Assembly (NCBI GenBank): GCA_037379345.1 | Contig: CM074519.1 | Location: 34,684,103-34,748,102 of the forward strand | Reading direction: 5' to 3' | From: Perna viridis | Taxonomy: Eukaryota | DNA: 64,000 nt | Shown: positions 5,245-64,000 of the stretch, piece by piece | Position numbering within the stretch: position 1 is the stretch's first letter | How the letters are laid out: each line of letters starts with the position of its first letter | Translations under genes and position numbers: made by a program | The notes under the pieces: generated by a model | The model's input: the letters and a program-made list of their open reading frames with translations, nothing else | Told to the model about the DNA's origin: nothing | The model's database searches: none

Positions 5245-5701
5245 TCAGTCAGTTGAATTGTCACCACTAGCCAAACTAAACTCCTTTACAGTGGCTTCCT
5301 GATTACCACTAACATCTATAGGAGGAAGCTTCATCGGCTTTGATTTATGTTGGTTCCTCTTTAACTCTGGTGCTGTAGAGTCATCCTTAGTTGTAAACAA
5401 CATATGATGAGGAGCTTTCTGGCTTACATAACTCGCTGTTACGGGCTGAAGGGTTCTGTCAAATAACTCCATTGTTTTCTCAGAGAAAAGAATAAATCGT
5501 TTTGGTTTTTCTTTCATTTCTTGTTTAGGACTTGTCTGTCCATCTGGTAATGCACTGCCTATTCCCACATTGATATCACTAGCAGTAGTAAGACCATGTG
5601 AAGGACTGGGCCGTATATCATCAGCAGGCTCAGTGAAACTAAATGTCGATGGTTTAAATGCTTTGCCCTTCTCCTGTCCAAGAAACTCTTTTCCAAAACT
5701 C
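5245..5701 (-). CDS. Exon 38 (terminal): low-complexity cytoplasmic tail WSFGKEFLGQEKG...SGDNSTD*
   Basis: tttatag| acceptor in phase 2, continuous with ORF 5245..5568 to TGA. Confidence 0.85.
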
Positions 5702-6394
5702 CTATAAAAATGTTATACATGTAATAATGAAATACAGTATACATTTTACAAAATGATTGTACTCACAGGAAAATATTATTTATTTTGACAAAGAAGGTGA
5801 ATGCATGTACATGAATTTGCTGTTATTTTGGAGTGGTAAAATTTCTACAGAATTAAAAGTAACAAGATGGCTACACATACCCTTATATCCCCTGTATATA
5901 TAAGCAGAGATGCATGGTGCGACATGTTAGTAAAGTAGAAAGAGGAAATCATCCAATTCAGAAGTAATGGATTAATGGTATATTGTTTTGATTAAAATAT
6001 TTTAGTTTCAGAGTTGCATTCACAACATTTTCTTTCAATATTAACAACAAAATTTGCTGAATAAAATAGTTGGTGTAGTATGCACATCTACACCTCATCA
6101 ACAACAGAACATTACATCTACACCTCATCAACAACAGAACATTACAAATTTGAACAGAATCCATTAAGTGGTTTCCACAAGGTCTATTGTTGAACTTGCT
6201 AAAAATGTGTAAGCCACTTAACTCCAACAAACAGAAACAAAAGGGTAGTAAAGTATGCACATTTACATTGCATAACATTACACGATACAAAATTTCAAAA
6301 TGGTTACTAAGGAGTTGCATCCATCAAACCTAATGGAGGAAGGATGCCTACCATTTTTACTGTGTCCCTCTGTCATTTTGTAGAAGAGGAAAAA

Positions 6395-7122
6395 CATGAA
6401 GTTACATGTATTGTTGCGCTATGCACATACCCTCACTCGTACATAAAGTTAATATAGGAGAGCAACCAAAATCACTTACAATAGATGGCTTACCTACATG
6501 AAGCCACACACCAAATTTGAAATCAATCAATATGTTTGAAACCTAGATGTTTATGATGAAAATTTTCTTTTGCTATTCCATATAGTAAAAAAAGACGAAG
6601 TCCCATGAAACAGGAAGTTGATAGCAGACAGCAAAAAAATTGCTTATAAAATATGCCTCATCTACATGTATATGAAGCCACACACCAAATTCGAGATCAA
6701 TCCAGCCATTAGGAGCTGAGATTTTTGTGACAAAAATTTTTCTATTCTTCCATATACTGAAAAATGGCAAAGTTCCACAAAACAGGGAGATAGTATAGGA
6801 GAGCATTACAAGATATGCACTATCTATATGATGCCACACACCAAATTTGATATCAATCCTTTCATTGGGAGCCGAGAAATTTCTCTATCATTCCACAGAG
6901 TGAAAAATGGCAAAGTTCCACAAAAATGGAAGTTGATATTGGAGAGCAACAGAAACTGCTTACAACATATGCCCCATCTACATAAGGCCACACAATAAAT
7001 TTAAAATGAATCCATCCATTGGGAGCTGAGAAAATTGCGACAAAAAATTTGGACAAATGGAATGACAGACGGACAAGGGTATTACAATATACCAACTACT
7101 CGTTGACTGGGGGTATAATAAA
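6395..7122 (+). mobile_element. HINE-like element with tandem core repeats (related partial copy at about 12480-12860)
   Basis: Repeated gccacacaccaaatttgaaatcaatc...ggagctgag core; gacagacggac tract; 3' stem ending ggggtataa. Confidence 0.6.
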
Positions 7123-7271
7123 AACATATGAAAATTTGGCTTTCATTACTCTATAACAATTTTATGCATTTCAAACTTTTAAGCCAATCTACTTCCATTT
7201 AACTGAATAAAATTGTACCTCCATAAAGGAGCTAAATAAGAGATGTTCCAGTACAGCATAGAAACACTTAC

Positions 7272-8417
7272 CATATGTTATAGCCAGGGTCTATTTTACT
7301 AGGCCTCTTTTTCTTGAAGTATCTTCTAATCAGTATAAAGCACATTACTAGTGTCAAGGCCACAGCAAATGTCAAGAGGATTGTCTTGACGACATTAAGG
7401 TTACATTTCTGGTAGCCAATCAGATCTTCACAATCATAGAAGACAGAACATGGATTTGGGTCACATTCATTGATGTCAGTCTGACACCATTGGTCGGTGT
7501 AACCAACATCACATTGGCAAACATACTTCTCAAAGGTCATTGCTCTCTCCTTGTCATCACACTGGGTAGAAGTTATATTGAGACAGTTACCATGGACACA
7601 TGGAGATAAAAGAATGTAAACATTAACCTCCATCATTTTAGTTGTAAATCTAGCTTGATCAAATCCCCTCACACTTAATGTCATCTGGCCATTGAATTCC
7701 TTATCAAGAGACAACCGAACTCTAAACATCTTTTTTCGTATGCCATGGAATTTGACAGGTTCAAAGGTCAAGTTGGCCAGCTGTTGGTTTGTTGTTCTCA
7801 TAGTGAAGTTTATTTCATTCGATGAGGGATCTACAAAGTCCACATCAAAGAATGTCACATGACCAAGATCATGTGACTTTGTCACATTTCCTTCCAGAAG
7901 TATAGACACAATCTTCATTCCACTACCTTGAACATCTATTTCTTCAAATACAAGGTCAGAATCAAATGGAAGAATTATAGGAGCATCATTTGCAGGTTTC
8001 ACATGTACTGTTATATTTCTGGTGCTAAAAAGTGGATGGAACGGTGGTAGAAGTCCTGTCTCCACAACTTTTACTACCACATAATCAATGCCATTGAAAT
8101 CTTTTGGAGGGAAGTAATGTATTTCCCCATCAGCAGTGATGTTTGCTTCTCCATGTTTCAATTCAACAATAGAGAATTCAACTGTATCCATTTCACCATC
8201 TAGGTACTGTATAGTCATAGTACCATTCTGATTCTGGGCATCATCCATATCTTCTGTGGCAAACAGGTCTGTTGTCAGTATCCTGGGCTGTGTGTTGGGG
8301 GCACGTCTGGACAAGCATTAAGGACCACATTCTTGGAACAGGAATATGGAGTGCAGCAGAACTTTTCTTCCTATCAGGATGATCAACTTCAAATTTCATG
8401 AACACTTCTTTACATAA
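7272..8417 (-). CDS. Exon 37: cadherin-like module(s), two EGF-like modules, TM helix and basic stop-transfer segment; apparent +1 frameshift near 8297-8301
   Basis: ORF 7268..8314: PNTQP...ATED...DGIDY...VKPANDAP (cadherin-like); SPCVHGNC...YVCQCDVGYTDQWC and DINECDPNPC (EGF, calcium-binding EGF start); ILLTFAVALTLVMCFILI-RRYFKKKR; ttccag|, |gtaagt. Confidence 0.9.
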
Positions 8418-8849
8418 CTGGAATTAAAGTACAATACATGTTAGTTGTACATATTACATTTATAAACCATGATAATTAAGTTATCAAATTTAGTTAAGTG
8501 GTTGATAGTACGAAAACATTAATTATGCTAATTGATCTTAAGTTCTAACAGTTAAATGGGGAAAAACTGTGTGAAATCAAAACTTACAATTGATTTTTAG
8601 TTTAAGGGGACAACCCATTGATTTTATGGAGTCAGAATATTTATATCTAGGAGGTGTAGGCCAGAATATTTATTTCCAAACACTGCAAGACCTCCCTTTC
8701 ATAATCAAATGCTTTTATGAAAATAGTCACAGGGCTTTTAAAATGGTATTTATATCATTGGTTACAAAGACTTTTTAAACACAAATTGGAAAACATTACC
8801 AAAATAACAAAAAAATTGAGGAAAACCAGTTAAATCTCATTAATCACAA

Positions 8850-9785: not shown

Positions 9786-9871
9786 CTTTGTTGAGAACAT
9801 GGAACCCTTATAGTCTGTAATATCCTGTACACCTTTACAGGTGTCTTGAGGATGCTTCCACAATTCAGCAA
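9786..9871 (-). CDS. Exon 36: VAELWKHPQDTCKGVQDITDYKGSMFSTK
   Basis: attgtag| ... |gtatac; phase 1 to phase 0. Confidence 0.8.
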
Positions 9872-10523
9872 CTACAATCAATTTATCATAATTAAATTAG
9901 TAATACCAACTTTCAAAAATGAAATATTTAAATTAATTTTCCTTTTAACATTAGCAATACATCTTGCATTAAGAAAGTTTCAAATAACAATTCAAATTGA
10001 TATAGTTTCACATCATTTATTTTGGGGCCTTTGTATAGAAGTTTTATTGTTCGTTGCTTGACTTTTGGTGGACGACTGTCTCAATGGCAGTCATGCCACA
10101 TCTTCTATTTTCATATATAATACTTGTTCTCAAGTTATATGCTAAGCATGAAACATATGACAAAATGTGAGCAGATATTTTCCAAACATCTTTTCACCAC
10201 CATTACTTTTAAAAAATTGTACTAGTCATTATTTGACTAACCATTTGAGTAGCATTTTTCTGGTAACAAAGAACATTTTGTAAGCAACAGTTTGGATATG
10301 TTTTGATGCAGCAGGAATGAGATCAATTCACATAAAACATATGCCCTGAAATTCTGTGAGTTGTTTAGTTACTTTAATTTAAATCAAGTGCTAGGCTTTA
10401 TCCATGTGAACAACATGTGAATTTCTGGTTGTACTCAAATTAATGTTACTGAAAAAAAAACATTGTCAGCAACATTATGTATATCAAATTTGACATCTTT
10501 ACAATAACTTGTAACATATATAC

Positions 10524-10669
10524 CATTGTCCCAATATATGAGTACAGGTAGATCTGTGTTGGGATCAAACATTGAAGAATCAAACTTTACATTGATCTTG
10601 TTCTCCCTCAAACTCTCAACTGTTGTTGATGGCGAGAGGTAAAACATTATACCAGCATACTGCTTCAAT
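10524..10669 (-). CDS. Exon 35: LKQYAGIMFYLSPSTTVESLRENKINVKFDSSMFDPNTDLPVLIYWDN
   Basis: ORF 10435..10668; ctatag|, |gtatat. Confidence 0.85.
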
Positions 10670-12323
10670 CTATAGAAAGAAAGAGTTGTGCTAACCCTAG
10701 TAGAGATATTTTAATCCTGATCCCCCTATTAATACAGCCCTTCTGTCTAGAGCACACACCCCAAAAACCAAGTTAAAATAAATCAGTTGTATTGCATCAG
10801 CAGGTAAACATACCATCAGGATGATGTAGAAATATATATATACAGATATATAATATCATAAGAGGGATGTGTCCCAGCAGAGTAGTAGAAAAATCAGGAC
10901 AGGGATGCATGTACTATAAATTGAGGAAAAAATTATATATTTACCACAAGAAATAATGTAAAGGGGGAAAGAGAAAAAATGATATCAGTCCAACTTTTGT
11001 GGAAGAAAAATTATTAAAATAAAATTCTTTGCAAGATGAAGCTCAATACTCCTTGAACAGTTGGGGCTAAGATAAAAATAATAGTCTTGATTTCTGCTAC
11101 CAGCAAGAAAAAATAGAGTATGTAGGTAGGGAAATTATTTCATTTTTCAAAAGCATTTCACATTGAGTTAACGGGACAACAATCTAGACTTTAACAGTGC
11201 TCGAGCCAAAATGGCAATGCATAAAATGTTAAGGGTAGAGTAGAGTGGAAGGACAACTTTAAGGCTTAATGAAGTTCTAAATTAATTTGGATTACATGTT
11301 TGACACAAAATAAGATTTAAAATAGACATTTAAAGATTATCAGGACAGACAGCATTTTAATGTTTATTGTTATTTTATGAAGTGTGAACCATGGACAGAT
11401 GAACATTCCTTTACATACTACAATTGGTTTGGACACTATATTGCAAAACAATTTAAATTGAAATAAAAATTTAGCAAATCAGACCACCAACGAAAAAGTC
11501 AATTTTCTGGGGTCTTGCACCTTTGAGCCCTTATAACTTGTTAACCATAAGAGATATGTAAAATCCCATTTGATCAATGCAAGCACAGATCTTCATAAGG
11601 AAAATAATATTAGTTTTTGACACATTTATAAGCATAGGGACTTACAATTCATTGTGGACACAACAACTGGTTTGGACACTATATTGCACAAAATTTAAAA
11701 ATCAATGTTTTTGAAATCGGACCAAAAATAAGGAAGTTGATTTTTTGGCCCCTTTAATCCCTTATAACTTGGAAAACTGTAAGAGATATCTGTAGAAATC
11801 TGATTAAAAAATGCAGGCAGGGATTTTCATATGGAATCCAATAAAAAAATTGGAGACCAGACCAAAAATAAAATTGTAGATTTTTTTGGGATGTGGCCAC
11901 TTTGACCCCTAATAACTCCAAAATGGTCCAAAATGCATCAAATCTGCTGAAACATTTATTTACCAAAATTATAAAAAAGGAATAATTAAAATCTGAAGAA
12001 AAAAACCATTCTACACTAGTTTTAATTAAACACCTATTTTTACTGTTTTCCCCTTATTCTTAAACGGTAGGGGTCACAAATTCCAAATTAAATAGGAACC
12101 TTCCTTTAGTGGTTAGTAAAATCATATCAACATTTCATAACAATTAGTAAACCACAACTAAAGTTATCACACGAAAACCAAGTGTCTAAGGACGATAATG
12201 ACAAAGACACAGATGACAACAGCATCATAACAACATATGACTGCACATTTTTTGTGGTCCTATACAAATTAATACATAACAAAAATTAATTCCATTGTGA
12301 TGTTGAAACTATCAGCAACTTAC

Positions 12324-12468
12324 CTATTTCTGAGGAACCTTGATGTATCATTCCATCGTGACATAGGATTTATCAGATATCGGTTGTATTTGTCAGAAGC
12401 AGCAGTACCATAGTCTGCTGTAACATCATCTTTTGACAAAACACCTCCTAACATTGTTATGTTTGTTC
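12324..12468 (-). CDS. Exon 34: GTNITMLGGVLSKDDVTADYGTAASDKYNRYLINPMSRWNDTSRFLRNR
   Basis: ttttccag| ... |gtaagt; open frame. Confidence 0.88.
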
Positions 12469-13099
12469 CTGGAAAAAAAACATGAAGTTGTACATGTTAT
12501 TGTGCTAGGTGCACCCCACTCATACAGGAAGTTGATATCGTAAAGCAACTAAAATAGCCTCTATAGTATGCCCCATCTATAAAAAGTCCCACTTGAAATC
12601 AATTTGTCTATTAGGAGCTAAGATTTTTATGACGAAAATTTTCCTTATAGTGAAATATGGCAATGTCCCACAAAGGAGGAAGTAAATATCCAACAGCACC
12701 CAAAATTACTTATAATGTATACCTCATCAAAAAAAAAAAACACACACCAAATTTGAAATCAATCCATCCATAGGGAGCCACTTTAGACAAAATGTGAAAA
12801 AATGTGGACATACAGACTTTGGATAAGGTGATTCCAATATATCATCCACTTATTGAATAAAAACCAATAATGTAAATGCAATATGGAAACTAGAAGAAAA
12901 TGATCAATAAATATGACAAGAATGCTTGTATTGAAGCTCCCTACCAAGTTTCAAAATTACTCCCATGAAAGGTTCTATACTTTCAATAAGCATATGGATA
13001 TGGAAACCTATGGGAGAATTAAAATAGAATATAAAGGACTGCCGTAATCCTTAATGCCCTGATGATAAGGGCAAGGGATAGAATAGCTGCACTTCCAAT

Positions 13100-13430
13100 G
13101 TAAGAAATACTCATCCCATTTTGCATTTCATTTCTCATTTTTATTCAATAAAAGACAAGGTATGTGCCAAAGGCTTGACTTTGTTATAGGAATAGTAAGC
13201 ATGCTGCCAGTAGCACTGGTAAGTGTCAAGTTGGTTGTCCATTCCATAAGATATTAAATTTAACCTCAAAGATTGCTTGTCTCATCTGTGATATAGAAAC
13301 ATAATATTGTCCAATCAAATAGTGATGACAACCATAAAACCTTTTTAGTGGTGATAATAACAATTAAAGGCTGAACATAACCCTGTTTTAGAAACTTATT
13401 TGATAGTAACCTTGCTATACAAAGACTTAA
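13100..13430 (-). mobile_element. Penelope-like retroelement 3' remnant
   Basis: Minus-strand ARLLSNKFLKQGY remnant followed by the usual ggtg...actgg...gcttac tail; similar to 55980-56300. Confidence 0.55.
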
Positions 13431-13451
13431 CACAATACTAGAAACACCTAC

Positions 13452-13626
13452 CTTTGATAATAATATCAGCTGACAGCCCTGTTTCTGTGTCCTGTAACTT
13501 GATCTCTCCATGCTGTTTAGTACCTGTACGTTTCCGATGGTCTGTGGGGGGTCTCAGGGACAGGTCTTGATCTTCATTGCCTATAATAATTGTAATAAAT
13601 CCTATAGATTTACTGTTTCCGTACAT
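13452..13626 (-). CDS. Exon 33: ...FITIIIGNEDQDLSLRPPTDHRKR TGTKQHGEIKLQDTETGLSADIIIK (acceptor uncertain: 13626 or 13601)
   Basis: ORF 13438..13626; strong donor G|gtaggt in phase with the next exon; the best acceptor (tttgacag) is out of phase, a weaker one (ctatag) is in phase. Confidence 0.7.
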
Positions 13627-14866: not shown

Positions 14867-15163
14867 GTTTGATACAGAGAGGTTCTGATCTGACACTTGA
14901 TGAGAGATGTGACCTTCCCACTGCATACAGTGTCACATAGACACATTTTCCTGGTTCTAAGACAAAGAAGGTGTTAGACTGAGCCTCGTGAACAGACTCA
15001 TTGCTCCAGCTCTTATTGGCAAACTCTCCTACAGAGATATTAAGGGGTGTCTTATCAATCCATAGTTTCCCATCCTTGATAAAGGCTTTCCTGGAATCAG
15101 TGATCCCAACTTTAATTCTTGGAAATACATCATCTGTCTCAGGTTCAGAGCCTATCTCCCATT
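14867..15163 (-). CDS. Exon 32: EWEIGSEPETDDVFPRIKVG...SEPLCIK
   Basis: ORF 14820..15233; ccacag|, |gtgagt. Confidence 0.88.
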
Positions 15164-15556
15164 CTGTGGAATGAAAATGGATTCTTACAATAGTTGACAA
15201 TTTTTTGATGAGCTCATCTTTTTTCACAAGCAACTTGCTTACAATTCCTGATGTTGATTAAATTTCACATTAACTAAAAGCAAGGAAGTCGTTATTCCAA
15301 AGTAACCAGTCAAATGTTTGACACATTAATTGCTGTCAACAGAGCAATAAAGGCCTGCTGTAAAGCCCAATCAGACATGCAACAAACTGTGTTTCATAAT
15401 TTACAATAATTCAAAAATGTATAAGCATGATGTCAACTAAATAGATGTATGACATATGCAACCCAGCAAACATTTCATGTTGAAATCTTACAATTTAAAT
15501 CAATATACATTTTTTTCATTAAGAGAACTAAACTTGATTTTCTTTTAAACATTTAC

Positions 15557-15859
15557 CATAAAATGCCACATCATCTTTCCCACCATCCCACTGCAGTCCA
15601 ATATTTTTGTTGTCTGCTGTTAAAACTGTGTCATCCATGACATCATCACTGTACATGTAGGTCAAGGTGACATTACTGACATCTGGTGGTAATATCTCTA
15701 CGGTAACATTACATGAATCCTGGGATACCAGACCAGCTGAGTTGACCACAGTGACAGTAAAGTAGTAGGTATGATCATGTTGTAGTTTTCCACTCAAACC
15801 AGTGACTTCAAGTTTCTTTGTCAGTCCTACAGATACTTGAGATTTTATGTCAGACTCAC
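15557..15859 (-). CDS. Exon 31: GESDIKSQVSVG...LQHDHTYYFTVTVVNSAGL... (FN3-like)
   Basis: ORF 15528..15929; ttttag|, |gtaaat. Confidence 0.9.
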
Positions 15860-16017
15860 CTAAAAACAAGAATAATGATAAATGTACTTCTTTATTGTTA
15901 GAATTCATGTACAATGCTTTGTTTTTCAAACTTCCCTGCTAGGCAATTAATTGCCAAAAAACAAATACAATTCTGCTTAACAACAATTTAAGTATTAAAA
16001 CAATGAGTTCATTGAAT

Positions 16018-17348
16018 AACCAGAGACTCTAAAGAGCCTGAAACGCTAACCTGTCTCAATAAGCAACATTCTACTTTTGTAACAATGTCCATGTTTTTTT
16101 CTTGGATAAATATTCCTAAAGCTCATAAATTAGAAAAAAATTATACCAATTTTCATTAAATTCTGTCCAGTAGATTTCTGAAGAGAAAATTTCCTAAAAT
16201 AACATTAAAAATAGCAAAAAAGATGTCGAAGGGCAGTAACTCAACATGACTAAACAGATTTACATGACAATTTGATCACTGATAGACCTCATCATACTGA
16301 ACATTTTATCCTACATCAAAATTTGGCTAATCCTAAAAGTTTTGGACAAAAATGCGAAAAACTACTGTCGTACCCCTATGTTCTATTTTTAGTATTGGCC
16401 GCCATGTTTTTTTGACGGATCAAAAATCCCCGTATCAGTTCTATGCAGGATACCCATAGGAACATTCATACCACGTTTGGGTCCAATTGATCAAGTTGTG
16501 TCAGAGAAGAGTTTTGAAAAACTGTTCACAATGACAGCGGACACGTGATGGCAATAGCTCATATATGCCTTCAGTCAGGTGAAGTAAAAAAATATTTATG
16601 GGGCCTTAACTTCTACATCAAATGATGAATTGCTTTGAAAATATTGGCATACGTCTATCGCATGATGCTGAACAATAGTACCCTGCCAGAATTTTGCTAA
16701 AGGCAAGAACTTTTGAGTTATTTGCAAAAAACTGCCATCTGACACCTATATTCTTTTCATTTTTAGAAACAGAAGCCATGTTTTTTCATGGATCAAAAAT
16801 CCCAACATTCATTTTGTGTGGGATACGCTAAAGAACAAATGTGCTATCTTTCATTGAATTCTGTAAAATGGTTTTTGAGAAGAAGATTTTCAAAGTTGTA
16901 CATGCAAAAAATGCCAAAAAAGCTATTTCAGGGGCCACAACTCCTACAATAGTTGACAAATTGTTATAAAATTTTCCGCATATGTCCGTTTCCTGATGCT
17001 GAACAATAACTGCTGCTAAAGGCAACATTTTTTGAGTTATTTGGAAAAAAATGCCTTCAGACCCCTGTGTTCAATTTTTAGTGACGCCGGCCATGTTTTT
17101 TCATGGATCAACAATCCCAATATTCATTTTGTGCACAATACTCTAAGGAACAATCATGCCAAGTTAACATCCTGTTGGACTAGTAGTTTCTGAGGAGAAA
17201 TTTTTCGAAAATTTGTCCGTATTGACAACGGACACCAAGTGTTGGCATGAGCTCATTTGGCCTTTGGTCAGGTGAGCTAAATGTTGTTCATGACGATGGC
17301 ATCAGAGGCCAAGCGATGGCAATAGCTTACATGGCCTTTGAGCTAAAA
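16018..17348 (+). mobile_element. Adjacent HINE/Helentron-like non-autonomous elements
   Basis: aaccagagactctaaagagcctg start; 3' hairpins gctcat..ggcc..ggtgagctaa; about 16600-17280 resembles 43060-43740. Confidence 0.7.
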
Positions 17349-17595
17349 AAGACTTCAGGATTCATAGACTAATTATAAATGTGGAGGTATAGGTGCTTAT
17401 GGCAGAATAAGTGATTTTTTTATTACTTTCCATAGAACGGCAAGCAATTAAGAAATTCTTAGTAGTATTTTGAAATGATACTGCAGTTATCAAAGAAAGA
17501 GAAGTCAGATGACATCTTAATATTTTAAAGGCATATTATAGGAACTCTAAAAAGAATGCCCAAAAATTAATTATACAAGGCTTTATCAATATTAC

Positions 17596-20500
17596 CTGGT
17601 TTAGAACCAATCTGTATCCGATACTGCACAATATCTCCAACATCTTCACTACACTCCCAGTAAGCTCCTATGCTGCTACTGGTTCCCTGAAATTCTGATG
17701 GTTCATCCATGGAATTTGATGGGTCAACACACCTGACATACTGTAGATCTGGAGGTGTAGAGTCTATCATCACTCCTTTAGACCTAGCAAATGTCTCACG
17801 TCCTGCATAGTTAATGGCTAGAATATTATAGAAGTATGTTGTAGCATTCAGCTGGCTATCAGAATTCTTTTGTGTTCTGTCTACAGTTGCTGCATTGAGG
17901 GTCAGATTTCCAACTTTAACATCAATTATTTGAAAGTCCTCTGTGTGACCGTCCGTACAGCTTGTCTCACAACCAATATTACAGCCTGGTTGGCATGGGT
18001 TACAGAATGATTTATAGAGCATCATGGGAGATATTGAGTCTGTGTCATTTATAGTATCAGAAATACCTACCCAAAGTTCCTTTATACCACTTTCACCATC
18101 ATAAAATCCTGCTCCATGAGAACATTTCATGTCATCTGTTTTTGCTAAGGGTACAGTAATACTGGTAATGATAGCTTCCCCAATGAATGGATTCAAGAAG
18201 TCTGTAACAGGTGGAAAGAAATTATCCTTATTCCATGTGTAAATTCCTGAGACTCCAGTTTCCTGTAGACCAACACCATTAAACTGGGCAATAATCTCAC
18301 CATTTAAGAACATATGAATACTCCAAGTTGTAGTTACAGGAGTCACAACTTTTCCAAGACTCACAATAAAATTATTATATGAAGAAGTAGGATCAAATTT
18401 CAGCTTAATCTGTTGAGAAATAGTTTTGTATTTATCCCGCTTCCAGACATAGCCATACCATTTTCCTTCCATCTGGTAGCCAGGGATATGAAACCCTATA
18501 CCATACTGATCTGAAAGTGCAAAACCTAACTCGTCAGATGTCTTGTTTAGCACCTTCCTCCTGAACTGTTGGCCTGGTGTTGTCAGCAACTTCTTGCTGC
18601 TATGGTAATCCAATGTTGTTTGTTTACTTTCTGTTGTACCATACACGGCATAAATAGGTTCTCTTGTTATATTTGTATAAAAATTTTCAGTTGTGACAGT
18701 TCTATTCCATTCATTGTTATAAGATGTACTATCGTCAGTGGAGTTATCAACAGTTGATGTTTCTGCATATCTTGTGGTTGGTGAAGATGATGTTCTTTCA
18801 TGAGTTCTAGATGTTAGTATATTAACCTCTGCATCTAAGCCACCCCTGATATCTTCCATTTTCACATTAGTATCATTTTCTGGTGGCTCAAATGTAAAGT
18901 CCGTTAATATACCATCAAAACTTGAGGCAAGGAACCAACTAGTTATCATGTGATCACCAGTAGCAGCTTTGAACACAGCACTATAATTTCCTTCCAAGAT
19001 TTTCTCTAAAGAAAGTTTGATTCCACCTTTTATCAAATGCTGTAACTTGTCATCATGTTGAATAAACAAGGATATTTTATCCTTCGTTTTTACAACACAT
19101 TCTGAATCAAAGTCCATTCCTAAAGCTACAACACCACTTTTAGCATTAGACGGTGGAAAGACTTGAATAGAGCGTGGACATTTTGATGCCTTTTCTGTGT
19201 AAGCAATTCCTACCATACCCTCCATAGTGTTGGCATTTGATTGGAATGAGATGTCAGTTTTCCAGTCTTTTCCCATTTTAACAACTCCTGGGATAGGTGG
19301 GGTAGTGTCAAGATGCACAGGAAGTGATCTTACAGTTGTTCTCAAACCTGCCCCATTTACTGCTGTGACCACTACAAGGTAAGTAAATTTTGAGTTGAGA
19401 TTAAGATCATAAAATTCCATTCGCAGATCATGAGTTATTTCCTCAGATCTTATAACAGAATACATTTCACCAAAATCTTTAACAGGAACCTCCCCAGTGT
19501 CAAAACAAGTGATACCAGAATAAAGCTTCAGCTCATAGATACTGACATGACTTTCAGGGTCTGTAAACTCTGTCCAGGAAATCTCAAGTCTCTGTGGATC
19601 AAAGACATATGCAACATTTGGACCAGTCCCACCTGGGAGATGTAACACCCCAGGTTCAGGGGGTGTAATGTCTATCATTAATGGGGGACCATATGAACCC
19701 ATGCATCTCTCAGTAGTATCCATGGCTATGACTGTCACATAATACTCATGTCCATGTATAAGACTCAGGTTGGTCATTTCTGTGAATGTATCAACCCCAA
19801 CATCATGTAGGTTTACAGTATTAAACACTGGTAACATTTCATCATAAAGCTTACAGCTTAATGTGTCATTTGGAAGTTGCCAGGGTTTGAATGTAGATAC
19901 TCCAACCCTGAATTTATCAATACCCATATCTGCTTGGAAACCATTCCATGATACATACAGCTTATCTGTGTATGACTGAACAGGGCTGTACTCAACAACT
20001 CCAGGAAATATCTCATCATGGTAGCCTACTTTAACACCATTGGAACTCTCTTCTTGGTAGCTACCAGCAAAACTATAACCCCTTACAGTCATGTAGTAAG
20101 TTACTGTTTTAGCAGTCAAATTAAGGTTCTTGAAAACATGGGATGTATTGAGACCTACATCTATATAGTAATGAACATTACTTCTGGTGCTTGCATATCT
20201 TCTGTCTGTTCCTATGGCTACTTCATATCTCTGGATCTTTTGTGTAGAGTCCCTGGATTTAGAATCTCCAAATGGATCCCAGTTGACATACAATTCATGT
20301 ATAGACTCTTGATAATTAAGGTCTTCAGATTCACCATCTCTAACATCTCCAGGTATAGGAGGTTCTATCTTCACAGCTATTCCATCAGAACGAGATATTC
20401 TGGATCGGTTTAAAGCATCAACAGTCCGTATAATATTGATGTAGGTTCTTCCATTGGTTAAGTTCATAACATCTGAGTAAAATCTATTTATAGCAGATGG

Positions 20501-45980: not shown

Positions 45981-46096
45981 CTGAAAAAAAAAAAAAAAAA
46001 AAATTATTATTATTATTATTATTGTTACTATACAACTCTTAAAATGAATACAATATTCATTACATAAGCTCTAACAGTCATATAAAGGACTTTTAC

Positions 46097-49347: not shown

Positions 49348-49511
49348 ACCTCATGTAATGTTGTGTATGCAGTTTTTATTCTCTTGAAGAGCTCCATAAG
49401 ATGAGTAATCTTGTCCCAAAAAGGGGCTGCTATGTTAAGTGTACCATTCAGTCGGTCTTTGAGAACATCTACGGCTTCATGGATCACAAGTTTGATTGAA
49501 TTGTGGGTTCC
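49348..49511 (-). CDS. Exon 12: GTHNSIKLVIHEAVDVLKDRLNGTLNIAAPFWDKITHLMELFKRIKTAYTTLHE
   Basis: ORF 49329..49538; cttgaag|, |gtatgt (phase 2). Confidence 0.85.
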
Positions 49512-50433: not shown

Positions 50434-50441
50434 CTATATGG

Positions 50442-51168: not shown

Positions 51169-52132
51169 AAGGAGACAAAATATTACAATTGTCTATTTCA
51201 TATTTATACCCCATGCAACAAAGTAGTGAAAGTATGATGTTTTTTAACACATCCATCCATCACAATTAGTTGTAGCCTAGATAATGCTTCCATTTAAAAA
51301 AAAATATATCCCTCAAAATTTGGTGCTTGGTTAGTAGCAATCAAACCATGGATGAGATTGATTTTCATAAAAATTGCTCAGTAGACTTACTAAGAAATAA
51401 TTATTGTTACCTGTATAGCGCCTACATCATTTGCTGGATTTCATTCAGACTTTGGTGAATGCTAGGTAGTATGAATACTCGCAATTAAATGGGGTTCATT
51501 GATTTCACAGAAATCAATCAAGGGGGACCATGTATATATGGGTGTAGGGGCTGAAGTTTTTCTAAAAAGTGGAAATATGAGCGTGCTATTGTTAAACATA
51601 CCTAATTACTTCATCTTGTGTCCTTTTTTATGCCATTTTAAGTAAACTAAAATGACTTATTTTCATATCACAGTATAATTGTCATGTCCATCTTGGCCTT
51701 CATTTGTACACATTTCAGTACAGAAGAAAGACATTGTAAAATAAGGCATACATGTATCTTTTATTCAAGCCCTTGTCTCTTAAATCTTAATTACAGATAC
51801 ATGTATAATGTATTGCAAAATTCAAAAATTGCATTTTGGGTTAAAAAATAAAACTGGAGCAATTTCAAATAATTATTTTATTTTCTAATATTTTAAGTAA
51901 TGCAAGAAATAACCAGTTCATCCGTTATAAAAGCACAAGCACACATTTTGTAACTCTCAAATTAAGAGGGTTGAGTTGTCTTCATCTATCAATATAGGAA
52001 AAAAATTAGTCTGATACAGCAGGTGTCATCAAAGTTAAACCTTGATTCGGGCATTAGAAATTGTCACATATGCAAGGCATGCAACAAATAAGTGTCTTTA
52101 TTGTATAAAATTAAAAAGAGCTACACTTTTAC

Positions 52133-52203
52133 CTTTGGCAAAGAAACATGCATCCATAATTCTATTCTTAGCTTCAATGAAAGTTCCAACTGCTAATTTA
52201 AAT
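52133..52203 (-). CDS. Exon 10: KFKLAVGTFIEAKNRIMDACFFAK
   Basis: tttttcag| ... |gtaaaa; bridges phase 2 to phase 1. Confidence 0.8.
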
Positions 52204-52562
52204 CTGAAAAAAAAGATTGTTATGCCATTTACAAATCAAGGAGATTAAAATTTGAACATGTAGTTTTAGTAAAGATGTTTTTGTATTTGTGTCTGAACGG
52301 CAGCAAGTCTATATGTATATAGCTGAATTCATGCCAAAAAAGATTATTTGGAAAAATGGAAAAATTACCACGATTTTCAAAAACCAAAAAAAAGAACAAT
52401 TTGAAAGATTTAGATTTAAAAGAAAAAGAAAGAAAAAAACAATTTGAAAAATTAAGACTCACCTTTGAATCATTAAATTCAGGAAAAAAGTTACTCATAA
52501 GAAAAAAGGGTCACAAATTTCATTTTTTGCTTTTGATGAACGTTAGCTTGATGGTTTTTCTT

Positions 52563-52735
52563 TAGGAAACAATTCGTGAAGGGGGTAGATTTGTACTGAT
52601 TTTAACATGGATATGGCATTTATACTAGACCATATAACACCGAACGACAGTGAGGTGTTAAATGAGAATATAAATGCCAAACCCATGTTAAAATGAGTAC
52701 AAATCTACCCCTGGGAGGAATTATTTCTTCTCTTA
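52563..52735. mobile_element. About 170-bp palindrome of a Crypton-like non-autonomous element (tentative family)
   Basis: ggggtagatttgtactgattttaacatgg / ccatgttaaaatgagtacaaatctacccc around aacaccgaacgacagtgaggtgtt. Confidence 0.65.
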
Positions 52736-53537
52736 TATGACAAATACGGTAATTTTTGTAACAAAAATTTCCCTAGGCATAGCCAAAATAACAGCTGTTC
52801 CGTTTAACCTCCCCCATATGGAAGTTGTATTAATGCGTGTTTACATCACCGCTAATTTCTGTAGGAGGCAATTAGAACAGCCACATGCCGATGATGCTCA
52901 TTTCTGTCATACATTTGTATATTTATATTATCGTGTGTGTTAAATGTGTATATTTATATAATTGATTTGAATTCGATAACCTCTCAGCCGTTAAATCATC
53001 GTGTAAACAATTTTAAATGAGTGTTTTGTCTCGAAGGACAGCGAAAAATAAGACAGTGCGTATGTGCTAAAGGTGGGGTTGTACCGACATATACTGTTTG
53101 ACGATACGAAGACGTCATATTAGAATTATGGAATAAGACATGAAAGTTAGCTTGAAGGTTTTATCTATGGAATAAGACATGAAATTTAGCTTGAGGGTTT
53201 TATTTATGGAATAAGACAACGATTTTTCATATGAAGCCATCTAATAAAAGATATTTAAGGTGTTGGCAAACTCAGAATTATTTCCCTATAGAAGAACATG
53301 AATTTTGCCCCTTACAAATATAAAAGAAAGATGTATACATAAATCAGTAATTTGAAGAATTCTAAAAAGAAATATCAAAAAGATTAAACGAGATCTTATC
53401 ATTCGACACAGAAATTTACCCTTTGGTTGCAAGGTTCTTAGATGGGCAGCTACTTTTATTAGAAAAATTACAGAATCATATGAAAAATGACTGAAAATAT
53501 ATTATTCTATAGCTGTGGTAAAGATTAGCCAACCTAC

Positions 53538-53677
53538 TTCAATAGAGCCATTTCGATTCCTTGCATAGAATCCATCGGATGTTCCCAGAACTCCCAGCTA
53601 TCCTTGATCAGCTTGAAACCTTCTCCCATTTCATTTCCGACAAAGGGCAAGGTTACTGTCATAGCATCAGCTATACT
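53538..53677 (-). CDS. Exon 9: SIADAMTVTLPFVGNEMGEGFKLIKDSWEFWEHPMDSMQGIEMALL
   Basis: tatttag| ... |gtaggt; phase 0 to phase 2. Confidence 0.85.
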
Positions 53678-54113
53678 CTAAATACAGTTTAAATATAGCA
53701 ATAGGATTTCATGAATTATTCTAAGTAATGAGTGTATTCAATCATGTTTAGTAATATTCAATATTTATTTGCCTTTTATCATTAAAATGTATATAGCATA
53801 CTTAGATGTGACTAATTCCTTAATCTGCAGTTGATTACTTGTAGGTTACCACAAAAACCAACCACTCCAAATTTAAAATAACATATTAAGTCCCTACTAT
53901 ACATCTGCTTTACACAAGGACTTTTCAAAGAAATTATAAAATAGCATAACTCAAAAACTGTAAAAGTAAAAATACAGAATTTTAACATGACCTGTCTATC
54001 ATGGTCAAAAAAATATAATTCAAGTGAAAAATAAGAGTTGATAATCAATACAAGCAATTGAGCAGAAAAAAATGTCTACCGAAATGTACATTTTTAACAT
54101 ATTGGAATCTTAC

Positions 54114-54446
54114 ATGATAGAACTCCATAACATCTGACTTTATATCCGATATGAAGGTTGTGATCCTGTTGACAAGTTTCTTGAACTTATTGATCAACGG
54201 GAATCCATCAAAGTCTGTTAACTTCTTGTAGGTTTCTCTAATTCTATTGACAATATCTCTGATGATTTCAGGGAGGTGTTTAAATAGGTCGATAATAATA
54301 CCAACAAGTTTGGAAAAGGTCTCATCTCTGACCATTTCAATAAGTTCTGCGATTGTTTTCACTGCATCAACAATGGGATCAATAACTTGATGGAAAATTT
54401 TGTCAAATGCTGAGGCTAACTCTTGTATGGCATTAAATCCATAATC
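54114..54446 (-). CDS. Exon 8: DYGFNAIQELASAFDK...IKSDVMEFYH (amphipathic helices)
   Basis: ORF 54045..54485; ttgcag|, |gtaaga. Confidence 0.9.
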
Positions 54447-54996: not shown

Positions 54997-55142
54997 CTTC
55001 AGAACATTAAGATTGTATCCAAACTTTGTCTTGTAGCACACCAAGACTTTGAATATATCATAGTGCTGATTAATAAGGCCAACATCAACTCTAGCATAGG
55101 CCAGGTTGTCTACTTTCAATTCAAACTTCCCCTTAAATGGTT
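54997..55142 (-). CDS. Exon 7: EPFKGKFELKVDNLAYARVDVGLINQHYDIFKVLVCYKTKFGYNLNVLK
   Basis: aatttcag| ... |gttggt; phase 1 to phase 0. Confidence 0.85.
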
Positions 55143-55684
55143 CTGAAATTTAGACATAAAGGCCATTATTATCAACTTAGATTGAAGACCAGAACTGATA
55201 TAGCAGTCGCCAGAGCCTTTAGATTAGTAAAGCCAGTTAGCATCTTTAATTATCTTACACTACCACAGGAAAATGGTCCTATTGGCAAACTCCATTAAGA
55301 TAAAAAATGCTGGTATTTCTAGTATATCATATTTAATTCTATGCTATTTATGCCAATAAACAACTAACCATTCACAACAACAAGCTTGTGTTTAGATACG
55401 TTTGAATTTGATCCCCGCATTTTCCTTTTATCCCTGCTTTTATCTCGTATATTTCAGTTTGACAATAATTACAGGTGTAAAAATTCAAACAATAGATATC
55501 AATTAATTCAGTACGGAAGTACTTTCATTAATTCTTTTAGAATACTTTTAGACATATTTTCCTCAAGTGCAAAATTGTACATTATAATTATACATTATTG
55601 TGTGTTATGTAAATTGTGATTTGATAAATATAAAGATACAGTACATTTGTATTATTCATATCAAATTTATAAAATACAAGTAGT

Positions 55685-56455
55685 CTCAACCCAGTTCAAC
55701 AATCCTAGTTTCAGGAATTTTATACATCACATCTACCCCAAATAACTTGAGATAAAGGATACTACAGACAATGTGAAGTCAGTCTCATATCTTGACCTAC
55801 ACTTTGAGATCGTTCGTAAAGTAAAACTATAGACCTAACTATACGACAACACTATAACATTTCATTCCGTATTGTCAACTTTCCTTTCATCTGTGACAAC
55901 ATCCCTACAGCACCTGCATATGGTGTTTTCATTTCACAACTCATAACGTTACGCCAGAGCTTGCCTAACTATGCAGACTTTATGTATCATGCTAGACTTC
56001 TTACAGTTAAGCCATCTGGAACAGGGTTATGTTGCAACAAAATTGAAGTCATTACAGCGTGTCATAGTTTTCCTTTCCTCTTTTGTCCACCCTAGACGTT
56101 ACTTTAAATGAGCAAGTTGGCGGGTGTTTCTAAAAGAAATTAGCCCAAGCTTGCTTAGATTCACTGGTACCTTAGTCGTATGATTTGCAGTATATAACTG
56201 TGCATTTATATTTATATGAAGTAGTGTGGTCATGCGGAAAAGCAGAGAATGCTTACCCATCCAGTGCACTTGGTCTATGCTCCTAGTTTTTAGTAGTGTC
56301 TGAGTTGCTCATTTACTTTAGTTACTTTGTATGTATTACTTTGGTTATTTTATGTTCTTTATTGTGTGTGTCTGTTTTTTTCCATGTCTGGTCTTTGTCC
56401 CTGGATTACAGTCTTTTGATTTCCACTAGAATAATGGTTCCCTTGATTACTCTTT
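55685..56455 (+). mobile_element. Degenerate Penelope-like retroelement (RT C-terminal part plus tail); tail-only copy at about 62015-62220
   Basis: Remnant translation LEIKDTTD..KSVSYLDLHFEI...LYD...IVNFPFICDNIPTAPAYGVFISQLI.YARAC with stops and frameshifts. Confidence 0.85.
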
Positions 56456-56594
56456 CACAATAACAAAATCATCAATATACAACACTTTACTTATTAATAA
56501 CAATATTTGCATTATGTCCTGTTTTTTTTTAAAAAAGAACTTAACTTCATTATCTTTGTACAAGACCTTAGTTATGCTTATTAAAATAAAATAC

Positions 56595-56773
56595 CTAACT
56601 GAAGATCAACAAAATTCTCCATCCTCATTCCAAATGAAGCCCCCAGCTTTGAACTCCCGATGGTCTTGTCCCATTGAAACTTAGGCATACCCAGATGGAA
56701 ACTGAGAGCTTTAAGAATATCAGCAAATGAAGCTCTCCTTATCCTGGTTATCACTGGGTAGGTATATCTCTGT
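56595..56773 (-). CDS. Exon 6: QRYTYPVITRIRR ASFADILKALSFHLGMPKFQWDKTIGSSKLGASFGMRMENFVDLQL
   Basis: ORF 56581..56853; ttacag|, |gtattt. Confidence 0.85.
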
Positions 56774-58418: not shown

Positions 58419-58549
58419 TCTAACACCGCTTCTTCCTGCTCCCTTGTCAGCTGTTTACTCTGAGGATGTTCAATGTAGATCTCATAGGCTCCATGTCGTA
58501 CAACATCTTCTGAGTCAAACAGTGTGGACCGCAACAGATGTGCTGCACT
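58419..58549 (-). CDS. Exon 5: SAAHLLRSTLFDSEDVVRHGAYEIYIEHPQSKQLTREQEEAVL
   Basis: tttttcag| ... |gtaagt; phase 0 to phase 2. Confidence 0.85.
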
Positions 58550-62329: not shown

Positions 62330-62473
62330 TTTCATTATGGACACCAAGCCATCTTTCAAACTTTTTGACAATTCTCTGAGCTTCAATGTCATCACCTAAG
62401 TCCCTCAGGTGTTTGGACAGAGCTCCCAGGGTCAGACAGGCTCTTTTCTGTGTCAATGTCATATTCCCAACTC
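62330..62473 (-). CDS. Exon 3: GVGNMTLTQKRACLTLGALSKHLRDLGDDIEAQRIVKKFERWLGVHNE (LLTP-like helical region)
   Basis: ttttcag| ... |gtatgt; open frame; 'ACLTLGAL' resembles lipovitellin helical-domain motifs. Confidence 0.85.
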
Positions 62474-62579
62474 CTGAAAATGTAATTAAGTTATAAATGT
62501 TACTTTTCCTCTATAGTTTCAAAAATACAATTAACATAGAAGAATGAATCAAAACATTGCTACAACTCCTTTACTTTAA

Positions 62580-62791
62580 GGAGGTATACCTAAGGTAAGG
62601 GACATAACTCTTAAAAATCATTGGAATGTTTGTATTCAGCATTTTACATCAATCTTATGTAAGCATATAATTAACTTGGATTCATTTTATTCTGCTTCAA
62701 ACAAAAGCTTGAGAGGCTTTGGTGAAATTGAGTATGAAGCAAACATATCACTGATTTCATGAGTTATGTCCCTTACCCTAGGTCTCCTTCC
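62580..62791. mobile_element. MITE with TTAA TSD (Kolobok-like termini)
   Basis: TTAA|GGAGGTATACCTAAGGTAAGGGACATAACTC ... GAGTTATGTCCCTTACCCTAGGTCTCCTTCC|TTAA. Confidence 0.8.
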
Positions 62792-63224
62792 TTAAATCAT
62801 TCTCCTATCAGAAGTTCCTCCATAACAAAAGTTCCAAAAGAAGAAATAGTACAGAATTTAAGTTCCTCTTGAAATCTGTAATATTTGTTCCTAGCAGAAT
62901 AAACCTAATATGACAAATGTTCCTAAAGGAAGTTTCATTATAAATTAATCTATAAGAAATGTTCCATTTTTATAAGGAACAAATAAACATTGACAAATTA
63001 AGTATCAATATAGGTAGAATTCTGCCAAAACATCATAATAATGTGACCTACTTGGATTTTATGACATCTCGGCACCATTTAAACTTTCATCTTTTTGATA
63101 CATTTTCAAATTTGAACTATAGGCAATGTTGATAACTTTAACCATATAGAAATTGTACAAATTCACACTTGAAAAACTGTCCAAAAAATCAATACTCTGT
63201 ATATTTAAAATATTATCAAAATAC

Positions 63225-63279
63225 CATGAAACTTGTCATCCTTCCCAAAGCATAAACATTCCACAGCTAGTATCAAGTT
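63225..63279 (-). CDS. Exon 2: NLILAVECLCFGKDDKFH
   Basis: tatttcag| ... |gtattt; bridges phase 0 to phase 1. Confidence 0.7.
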
Positions 63280-63969
63280 CTGAAATAAAATTATTTGCTA
63301 TGCGTGTATTTATATTATATTAGGTAAAAACAGTAGATATAATATTGAAATTATTTTCATAGAACCCTTGAAAATACAGAAACAAAATTATCATATCTTT
63401 AAGTTTAAAAAAATATATATTCTAGGTTCTCAGGCACCGCCGCATCCCTAAAAATCCTCCCACACCTGCGATTTAAGTTTTCAAAACATGTCAAAAAGAA
63501 AAATTCTAGACTATAGAGAAAGTTGTCAATAACACACATAGGTCTACCAATCTAGTATTATAATTTCAATGTGTAAACTGTCAAGTCAGAAAACAATATA
63601 AGAAGATGAAGGGCTTCAAATGAAGACACACACAATACAATCCATCATGCTGAAATTGTATAAAATTCATGAAGAGTTCCTAAGTTTTAGAAAACTGAAC
63701 CATAAAATTTAAACAAACAAGATGTTGCATACTTCATCATGCTAAGATTATACCCAGTAAAGTCATCATGCAAAAGCAAATAGAAGCTAAGAAATCTGTC
63801 ACAGAAATTTGCAACGAGTGGATGTACAAGGTGATGGCAATGTAATAAAACACCTGGCTAAAACAGTGCTGAAGATTTGTCATGGGAACACAAGTTGCAC
63901 TAACAGTAGACAAAATATGACAAAATTCAACTTCTCAACTACATTGTATGTATATCAATACTATGTTAC

Positions 63970-64000
63970 CTTGACTGGTTGTTGAACTGCAGTACAGTGA
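63970..64000 (-). CDS. Exon 1 in window (partial): ...HCTAVQQPVK
   Basis: Donor AAG|gtaac; phase 0 matches the next exon. Confidence 0.6.

What the first reader, a model, noticed from the sequence alone, without database searches (positions are those of the whole stretch)
5245..64000. Giant type-I membrane protein carrying a vitellogenin/apolipophorin-type lipid-transfer module on an FN3-cadherin-EGF stalk
Seen: one spliced frame of about 4,800 aa joins an N-terminal region with LGNAG and RxAAxALR helical motifs, beta-rich and amphipathic segments to PAN, more than a dozen FN3-like repeats, cadherin-like, EGF, TM and cytoplasmic segments. Known: classical LLTPs (vitellogenin, apoB, apolipophorin, MTP) are soluble secreted or ER-lumenal proteins. 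Inference: this is a cell-surface-tethered lipid-binding module on a long stalk, which could act as a lipid/lipoprotein capture receptor, a pattern-recognition receptor, or a membrane precursor of a shed lipoprotein. I know of no functional description of this architecture.
Basis: partly seen in the sequence, partly recalled or inferred. Interest (0 to 1): 0.85.

Follow-up and report, generated by a model that had tools for sequence, protein, structure and literature searches.

The report
Giant membrane protein with vitellogenin-type head
This is one real gene of about 5,100 amino acids, probably from a mussel-like bivalve, that puts the N-terminal domain of yolk and lipoprotein carriers (vitellogenin, apoB, MTP) on a long fibronectin-type stalk anchored in the cell membrane; the family is conserved from a single-celled relative of animals to amphioxus, and I found no study of it.

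Summary
On the minus strand, 38 in-window exons (5245-64000) plus at least five exons in the 10.3 kb beyond the window end form one reading frame. About 4,790 aa lie in the window and the whole protein is about 5,100-5,200 aa.

- **Order of parts:** signal peptide, vitellogenin-type N-terminal domain (LPD_N), two conserved RX(K/R)R sites, amphipathic helical repeats, a degenerate peptidase-M23-like domain, PAN, at least 13 FN3-like domains, cadherin-like domains, EGF, one transmembrane helix, and a tail of about 170 aa.
- **One gene:** the frame is colinear end to end with "uncharacterized" proteins of Mytilus (67% identity), other molluscs, hemichordates, a sea star and amphioxus. In Capsaspora the LLTP helical domain and the FN3 array lie in one 3,988-codon exon.
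- **What is not:** the lipid-cavity beta-sheets were not detected (PF09172 and PF19444 negative).
- **Anchor:** it varies. Haliotis, amphioxus and Capsaspora models lack a transmembrane helix.

I found no literature on the family. I class it as a new variant of a known kind, interest about 0.6.

The parts
63970..64000 (-). In-window end of exon 6 (the exon continues to 285 bases beyond the window end). It starts the LLTP helical subdomain, profile positions 306-401.
   Evidence: Family profile hit, iE 5e-20; splice model
62330..62510 (-). Exon 7, LLTP helical subdomain.
   Evidence: Profile positions 416-469, iE 3e-11; 73% identical to Mytilus P0166
58860..59092 (-). Exon 8. It carries the first conserved RX(K/R)R site (REKR|S), then LGNAG and RRTAAHALR.
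   Evidence: Pfam Vitellogenin_N positions 482-524, 24.6 bits, E 1.2e-5; motifs; site conserved in 11 of 12 orthologs
58419..58549 (-). Exon 9, end of the helical subdomain.
   Evidence: Profile positions 536-585, iE 1.6e-10
54997..56773 (-). Exons 10 and 11 (56595-56773 and 54997-55142). They carry the second conserved RX(K/R)R site (RIRR|A) and a short conserved beta-type region.
49348..54446 (-). Exons 12-16 (54114-54446, 53538-53677, 52133-52203, 50087-50433, 49348-49511). This is an amphipathic helical region that includes proline-punctuated WEKLKDLKP-type repeats.
   Evidence: Translations; weak ApoLp-III and coiled-coil type Pfam hits only; long low-confidence helices in the matching part of the Capsaspora model
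45361..48368 (-). Exons 17-18 (48194-48368 and 45361-45980): a degenerate peptidase-M23 (LytM)-like domain followed by an acidic linker.
36320..44553 (-). Exons 19-25: a linker, a Cys-rich part and a beta module that join the head to the PAN exon.
   Evidence: Colinear profile hits; splice model. A spliced contig joins 41919 to 41048 with GT..AG on the minus strand, and another contig ends exactly at the predicted acceptor 38064
33625..34842 (-). Exon 26 (406 aa), the most conserved exon. The PAN/apple domain is at 33879-34085.
   Evidence: PAN_1 E 2.3e-7; profile score 590 bits; 71% identical to Mytilus
32365..33385 (-). A 95-bp x 11 tandem array. Each unit is a copy of mini-exon 27 plus its GTGAGT donor. 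The first copy (33298-33392) is the likely real exon.
   Evidence: TRF: period 95, 11 copies, 89% matches; seven copies hit profile positions 2050-2080
14867..31999 (-). Exons 28-36: the array of FN3-like beta-sandwich domains with recurring VD.TPP boundaries. It includes the 1,472-nt exon 21326-22797 and the 3,284-nt exon 17596-20879.
   Evidence: AlphaFold model of 17567-20896, pLDDT 78; Foldseek hits to tandem FN3 arrays, E about 1e-14; 13 boundary motifs; 889 relatives of this exon in the representative library
9786..13578 (-). Four small exons (13447-13578, 12324-12468, 10524-10669, 9786-9871) between the FN3 array and the last extracellular exon.
7271..8420 (-). Cadherin-like domains, two EGF-like modules, the transmembrane helix (7328-7393) and the stop-transfer stretch RRYFKKKRPSK.
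   Evidence: Translation; Big_9 and Cadherin_4, weak here, Cadherin_4 above cut-off in Mytilus P0166; 67% identical to P0166 over 349 aa
5245..5700 (-). Last exon: the cytoplasmic tail, with the stop codon at 5245-5247.
   Evidence: Translation; matches the tail of Mytilus P0166, E 5.8e-12

Best explanation
**Shown.** One minus-strand gene of about 69 kb and roughly 45 exons encodes a type-I membrane glycoprotein of about 5,100-5,200 aa. From N to C it has:
- a signal peptide;
- the LLTP N-terminal domain (N-sheet, then the helical subdomain with LGNAG...RRxAAxALR);
- two conserved furin-type RX(K/R)R sites that bracket the last ~125 aa of the helical subdomain;
- a short beta region;
- apolipoprotein-like amphipathic helical repeats;
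- a catalytically degenerate M23/LytM-like domain;
- a PAN/apple domain;
- about 18-20 FN3-like sandwiches;
- cadherin-like domains, two EGF modules, one transmembrane helix and a tail of about 170 aa.

It belongs to a conserved, unnamed holozoan family.

**Inferred mechanism.** The protein is a cell-surface recognition or adhesion receptor. The FN3 stalk holds an LLTP-derived head tens of nanometres from the membrane. A proprotein convertase cuts the head in the secretory pathway, as happens to apolipophorin II/I and insect vitellogenins. The cut head either stays attached non-covalently or is released.

The head and the amphipathic helices bind a hydrophobic or lipoprotein-type ligand, or a protein partner. 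The PAN domain adds protein or carbohydrate binding. The tail could signal or sort the protein.

My odds: single gene and this architecture, about 0.95; LLTP-derived head, about 0.85; surface receptor or adhesion role, about 0.5; lipid as the ligand, about 0.3.
For: **One gene**
- The exon chain is colinear and matches the splice phases.
- It is 67% identical to Mytilus trossulus LOC134727466 from the helical domain to the cytoplasmic tail.
- Full-length colinear models exist in Haliotis, Ylistrum, Argopecten, Saccostrea, Argonauta, Ptychodera, Saccoglossus, Acanthaster and Branchiostoma.
- In Capsaspora, aa 1-3988 (LLTP helical domain to FN3 array) are a single exon.
- One RNA-type contig joins 41919 to 41048 with GT..AG.

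**LLTP head**
- A signal peptide is followed by the YHYEAGYEHHYTYSS start motif, which is shared by the orthologs.
- PF01347 scores 24.6, 46.2 and 59.6 bits.
- The Saccoglossus ortholog matches N-sheet positions 84-163.
- The family's N-terminal profile hits the exons of three canonical LLTP genes of this genome in colinear order over positions 15-545.
- The MTP helical domain is the top fold match.

**Other parts**
- Furin-type sites.
- Amphipathic repeats.
- M23-like domain.
- FN3 fold.
- Transmembrane helix in the window protein and in the bivalve, cephalopod and hemichordate orthologs.
Against: - No lipid-cavity sheets were detected: PF09172 and PF19444 are negative here and in the orthologs. 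The region after the helices folds with low confidence in the only model I could make.
- The evidence for the N-sheet is weak: 19 bits in one ortholog, and single-exon E-values of 0.005-4.
- Expression is very low in the two RNA runs laid, and only one junction was seen.
- The anchor is absent from the Haliotis, Branchiostoma, Acanthaster and Capsaspora models, so tethering is not the family's conserved feature.
- Cleavage, ligand, tissue and signalling are all inferred.
Confidence: 0.55

Rival explanations
1. The head has nothing to do with lipid. The LLTP N-terminal domain is kept only as a protein-binding scaffold, as the MTP N-sheet and helices bind PDI and apoB, and the vitellogenin N-terminus binds its LDLR-family receptor. 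On this reading the protein is a structural adhesion or matrix/glycocalyx component, or a tethered ligand for such receptors.
For: - No open beta-sheet or MTP lipid-binding profile was found.
- The rest of the protein is typical adhesion hardware: PAN, FN3, cadherin-like and EGF domains.
- In other lineages the C-terminus carries Sushi plus a C-type lectin, or somatomedin B.
Against: - Conserved amphipathic, proline-punctuated helical repeats follow the head.
- MTP's own lipid-binding sheets are covered by PF19444, not PF09172. Divergent sheets could escape both profiles, so the negative result is weak.
Confidence: 0.3
2. It is a membrane-bound precursor of a shed lipoprotein or opsonin. Convertase cleavage at the two conserved dibasic sites releases the N-terminal ~460-aa fragment, or a larger head, into the haemolymph or onto mucus.
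For: - Two RX(K/R)R sites are conserved across molluscs, a hemichordate and amphioxus.
- From my own knowledge, not tested here: apolipophorin II/I and insect vitellogenins are cleaved at such sites.
- Some family members lack an anchor.
Against: - The sites lie inside the helical subdomain, where cleaved LLTP subunits normally stay associated.
- A released fragment of about 460 aa would lack any candidate lipid-holding part.
- There are no protein data.
Confidence: 0.1
3. It is an artefact of reading: two adjacent genes, a secreted LLTP-like gene and an FN3 membrane gene, joined by eye.
For: - RNA support in the linker is thin.
- Exons 21-24 are weakly conserved, at 12-16 bits.
Against: - Phases and profile gaps match at every junction.
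- No stop codon, signal peptide or transmembrane helix lies between the two parts.
- The same join is found in more than 10 species and in the intact paralog.
- In Capsaspora the two parts share a single exon.
- A spliced contig bridges 41919 to 41048.
Confidence: 0.03

Closest known systems
Unnamed ortholog family: Mytilus trossulus LOC134727466 (P0166), Haliotis XP_067664253 (P0003), Ylistrum LOC132554093 (P0006), Argonauta LOC115224694 (P0162), Saccostrea LOC134249704 (P0163), Ptychodera (P0167), Saccoglossus LOC102804939 (P0035), Acanthaster LOC110986022 (P0185), Branchiostoma LOC144887293 (P0155)
   Same: They are colinear over the whole length, with the same order of head, M23-like domain, PAN, FN3 array and cadherin-like domains. 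Identity to Mytilus is 67%. The same transmembrane helix is found in bivalves, a cephalopod and hemichordates.
   Different: All are annotated 'uncharacterized' (one amphioxus entry is called 'SELE'). The C-terminal end varies: Haliotis and Acanthaster models have no transmembrane helix, and amphioxus ends in Sushi plus a C-type lectin.
Classical LLTPs: vitellogenin, apolipoprotein B, apolipophorin II/I, MTP (Pfam PF01347; solved structure 6i7s)
   Same: They share a signal peptide, the start motif of the N-terminal domain, and the helical subdomain with LGNAG...R..A..ALR. There is a fold match to MTP residues 298-552. Dibasic processing sites occur as in apoLp-II/I.
   Different: No PF09172, PF19444 or VWD domain is present. 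The protein is about 4,000 aa longer through non-LLTP domains, and it is membrane-anchored. Identity to canonical LLTPs is very low, with exon-level E-values of only 0.005-4.
Capsaspora owczarzaki KJE92161.1 (P0178, 4,741 aa, 'Fibronectin type-III domain-containing protein')
   Same: It has the LLTP helical domain (59.6 bits), then the M23-like domain, then the FN3 array, in the same order. It scores 304 bits against the metazoan N-terminal profile.
   Different: It is almost intronless. Its N-terminus is cut by an assembly gap, which I did not fill. Its C-terminus is EGF repeats plus somatomedin B, with no transmembrane helix.
Peptidase M23 / LytM domains (PF01551; 3nyy)
   Different: The first zinc histidine is absent in all members aligned, and the remaining HxH histidine is lost in the window protein and in Mytilus. 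This points to a pseudo-enzyme.

Membership tests
LLTP superfamily (PF01347 / LPD_N proteins) | Secretory signal peptide directly followed by the LPD_N start motif (aromatic-x-x-G-x-x-Y-x-Y) | tested here: met
   MLLILAVLVFGSTTA, then YHYEAGYEHHYTYSS, lies 10.3 kb beyond the window end. The same pattern is found in 10 orthologs.
LLTP superfamily (PF01347 / LPD_N proteins) | N-sheet beta-barrel (PF01347 positions ~1-300) | tested here: inconclusive
   Only Saccoglossus P0035 matches positions 84-163, at 19 bits, below the cut-off. The family profile gives weak but colinear hits on the N-sheet exons of three canonical genes. Single exons gave no Pfam hit. The joined sequence was not folded.
LLTP superfamily (PF01347 / LPD_N proteins) | Helical subdomain with LGNAG and R..A..ALR (PF01347 positions ~300-590) | tested here: met
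LLTP superfamily (PF01347 / LPD_N proteins) | Lipid-cavity beta-sheets (PF09172 open beta-sheet, or PF19444 MTP lipid-binding) | tested here: not met
   Whole-genome scans hit only the canonical genes on C1, C2 and C4, and nothing on C9. Neither profile is found in the orthologs. A divergent version cannot be excluded.
LLTP superfamily (PF01347 / LPD_N proteins) | Binds or transfers lipid | not testable with these tools
   This needs biochemistry.
Unnamed giant LPD_N-PAN-FN3 family (Mytilus LOC134727466 and kin) | Full-length colinear homology | tested here: met
   Profile positions 10-4871 are matched in order. Identity to P0166 is 67% over 4,756 aligned residues.
Fibronectin type III arrays | Tandem beta-sandwich domains of FN3 topology | tested here: met
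   AlphaFold model of the 1,109-aa exon, pLDDT 78. The top Foldseek hits are tandem FN3 arrays, E 2e-14 to 1e-11. Pfam fn3 is above its cut-off in the orthologs.
PAN/apple (PF00024) | Profile match above the curated cut-off | tested here: met
   31 bits against a cut-off of 21.4, E 2.3e-7.
Peptidase M23 (PF01551) | HxxxD and HxH zinc/catalytic motifs | tested here: not met
   The first histidine is replaced in all members. The HxH histidine is replaced by Phe in the window protein and in Mytilus. Only the fold and motif remnants are kept.
Cadherin-type domains | Profile match above the cut-off | tested here: inconclusive
   In the window exon, Cadherin_4 scores 17.7 bits and Big_9 21 bits, both below their cut-offs. 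In Mytilus P0166, Cadherin_4 scores 26.8 bits against a cut-off of 25.1.

The most novel reading that the evidence does not exclude
This family is a fourth branch of the LLTP superfamily that predates animals, beside Vtg, Apo and MTP. Its ancestral job would be sensing or capturing lipid or lipoprotein at the cell surface, not transport. If so, the secreted carriers could derive from an adhesion-type receptor. The Capsaspora member would then be a candidate sensor for the host lipids and lipoproteins that trigger its aggregation (PMC11399711 reports the response but names no receptor).
Probability: 0.15. Interest if true: 0.85.

Novelty: new variant of a known kind. Interest (0 to 1): 0.62.

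Why it matters
- **A class that LLTP surveys miss.** LLTP reviews and a 2024 mollusc survey (PMC10799875) sort the superfamily into Vtg, Apo and MTP and date its origin within animals. Here the LLTP N-terminal domain sits on a giant adhesion-type protein. The architecture is conserved in molluscs, hemichordates, an echinoderm and amphioxus, and it is also present in the filasterean Capsaspora.
- **What that would imply.** The domain would be older than animals, and it would have a second, non-carrier use.
- **It is testable.** Expressing the head and asking what it binds is a direct experiment.
- **Annotation.** It gives a reading for a set of 'uncharacterized' 5,000-aa proteins.

Tried and rejected
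**Searches that gave nothing**
- phmmer of the Argonauta ortholog against PDB sequences: no LLTP hit.
- Pfam on single N-terminal exons: nothing beyond the LGNAG exon.
- A GTDB scan for the intronless metagenome relative P0113: no relative, so its organism stays unknown.
- Earlier findings of this scan: none.
- Literature searches for the architecture, for the gene identifiers and for pre-metazoan LLTPs: nothing.

**RNA reads.** Over 36300-42200 the two raw RNA runs gave almost no exonic reads. Only one spliced contig and one contig edge were informative. Most of the depth is intronic repeats.

- I did not send a joined (spliced) protein to any search or fold tool. Exons were searched by reference, and a script tallied the exon chain only for coordinates and length.
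- For that reason the LLTP head of this gene could not be folded. I folded the single-exon Capsaspora homolog instead. It lacks the N-sheet because of an assembly gap, which I did not fill.

**Rejected.** Reading the head as a generic HEAT repeat. HEAT_2 scores lower than PF01347, and MTP is the best fold match.

Full report
**Where it lies.** The window is G000:C9:34684103-34748102 of a 723-Mb eukaryotic genome with about 33% G+C. All long open pieces of the finding are on the minus strand, so the protein's N-terminus points towards 64000 and beyond. I fetched 60 kb beyond the window end and 104 kb before its start.

**One gene.**
- The 1,109-aa exon (17567-20896) has 889 relatives in the representative library. 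Several are 4,600-6,000 aa long.
- The named relatives are all 'uncharacterized' proteins of Haliotis, Ylistrum, Argopecten, Saccostrea, Mytilus, Argonauta, Saccoglossus, Ptychodera, Acanthaster and Branchiostoma, plus one protein of the filasterean Capsaspora.
- A profile of 12 full-length orthologs hits minus-strand open pieces in perfect order. The hits run from 10.3 kb beyond the window end (profile position 10) to window 7292 (position 4871).
- A simple splice model finds GT..AG at the junctions. At nearly every junction the number of residues added equals the gap in the profile.
- The Mytilus trossulus ortholog is 67% identical over 4,756 aligned residues. It adds three exons, including the cytoplasmic tail exon that ends at the stop codon 5245-5247.
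- In Capsaspora, residues 1-3988, from the LLTP helical domain through the FN3 array, are one uninterrupted exon. The fusion therefore does not depend on any splice prediction.
- RNA support here is thin. Fourteen small contig sets that are probably transcriptomes hold 23-53% of the words of the two giant exons. In the linker, one spliced contig joins 41919 to 41048 (GT..AG on the minus strand), and another contig ends exactly at the predicted acceptor 38064. Two raw RNA runs show almost no exonic reads.
- I sent no joined protein to any tool. Exons were searched by reference.

**The head.**
- The first exon encodes a signal peptide followed by YHYEAGYEHHYTYSS. The orthologs share this LLTP-type start.
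- Exon 58860-59092 carries LGNAG and RRTAAHALR. It matches Pfam Vitellogenin_N positions 482-524 at 24.6 bits, against a cut-off of 24.
- Orthologs match more strongly: Argonauta at 46.2 bits (positions 315-553) and Capsaspora at 59.6 bits. Saccoglossus weakly matches N-sheet positions 84-163.
- In the other direction, the family's N-terminal profile hits the exons of three canonical LLTP genes of this genome. The hits are colinear over positions 15-545 and stop there. Each hit is weak on its own.
- I could fold only the single-exon Capsaspora N-terminus. Its residues 22-300 form a confident solenoid.
- The lipid-holding sheets were not found. PF09172 and PF19444 hit only the canonical LLTP and MTP genes.

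**Between head and stalk.**
- Two RX(K/R)R sites are conserved from molluscs to amphioxus. In this protein they read REKR|S and RIRR|A. They bracket the LGNAG segment.
- Next come a short beta region and a helical region of about 330 aa. The helical region includes proline-punctuated WEKLKDLKP-type repeats.
- An amphioxus member matches Pfam Peptidase_M23 at 25.1 bits, below the cut-off.
- The zinc and catalytic histidines are missing, completely so in this protein and in Mytilus.

**The stalk and anchor.**
- PAN_1 scores E 2.3e-7.
- The AlphaFold model of the 1,109-aa exon has pLDDT 78. It is a string of beta-sandwiches with one disordered linker. Its best matches are tandem FN3 arrays of titin/MyBP-C, cytokine receptors, RPTP-sigma, LAR and fibronectin.
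- Thirteen VD.TPP-type domain boundaries are present.
- The last extracellular exon holds the cadherin-like domains, two EGF modules and a 22-residue hydrophobic helix followed by RRYFKKKRPSK.
- A matching transmembrane helix exists in the bivalve, cephalopod and hemichordate orthologs. It is absent from the Haliotis, Branchiostoma, Acanthaster and Capsaspora models.

**Surroundings.**
- A complete, intact paralog lies tail to tail at C9:34,595,186-34,648,000 on the plus strand. It is 68-95% identical exon by exon and has its own transmembrane helix.
- An isolated copy of exon 3, and an unrelated plus-strand gene rich in the same FN3-like repeat, lie upstream.
- The intron after exon 27 holds ten further copies of that mini-exon with its donor site.

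**Reading.** The anatomy is that of a surface recognition or adhesion protein whose distal end derives from an LLTP. I think it most likely presents a convertase-processed head far from the membrane to bind a ligand. Lipid or lipoprotein is one candidate and a protein partner is the other. None of this was tested.

**Literature.** In the library I could search, the family is not described. A 2024 mollusc LLTP survey recognises only the Vtg, Apo and MTP classes.

Noticed in passing
window 32365-33385: A 95-bp unit is repeated 11 times, with a higher-order period of 464 bp at 98% identity. Each unit is a copy of the 33-aa mini-exon plus its GTGAGT donor. Because 95 is not a multiple of 3, only one copy can be used. 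The paralog has two copies.
   Followed up: partly
G000:C9:34595186-34648000 (plus strand; loci L021, L017, L018, L022-L024): A complete second copy of the gene lies tail to tail with this one, with about 41 kb between the 3' ends. Identity is 68-95% aa per exon, and the copy keeps an intact transmembrane helix. This looks like a recent inverted duplication.
   Followed up: yes
L006:3840-3956 (minus strand), about 34 kb beyond the window end: A lone extra copy of exon 3 (the N-sheet motif IHYHPEEKDEL...) with no other exons around it.
   Followed up: partly
L008, about 50-60 kb beyond the window end (plus strand): Another gene built from the same FN3-like repeat, but not colinear with this family.
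   Followed up: no
window 62575-62800: An interspersed repeat of about 220 bp. At least 40 copies at 92-95% identity are spread over the chromosome-scale contigs. Its two ends match each other in reverse, as in a MITE.
   Followed up: no
L011:1890-2900 (Capsaspora KE346363.1): An assembly gap lies directly upstream of the Capsaspora homolog, in frame with it. Its N-sheet, if present, is therefore unsequenced.
   Followed up: no
L009:160-12300, L010:787-12882, L019:1431-13547: Intronless relatives of about 4,000 aa on metagenome or Logan contigs. They have a weak Vitellogenin_N/HEAT match plus FN3 arrays, and closely spaced same-strand neighbour genes. The organism is unknown, and no close relative was found in the GTDB genomes.
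   Followed up: partly
G000:C2:6.33-6.42 Mb and 11.06-11.10 Mb; C1:34.30, 67.06 and 69.88 Mb; C4:43.39 Mb: The canonical LLTP set of this genome: three tandem vitellogenin-type genes, two more on C2, three loci on C1, and the MTP gene on C4.
   Followed up: partly
window 38233-38380 and 40240-40630: Piles of RNA reads and contigs in introns, with loose ends that run into unrelated sequence. These are expressed repeats from elsewhere, not exons of this gene.
   Followed up: no
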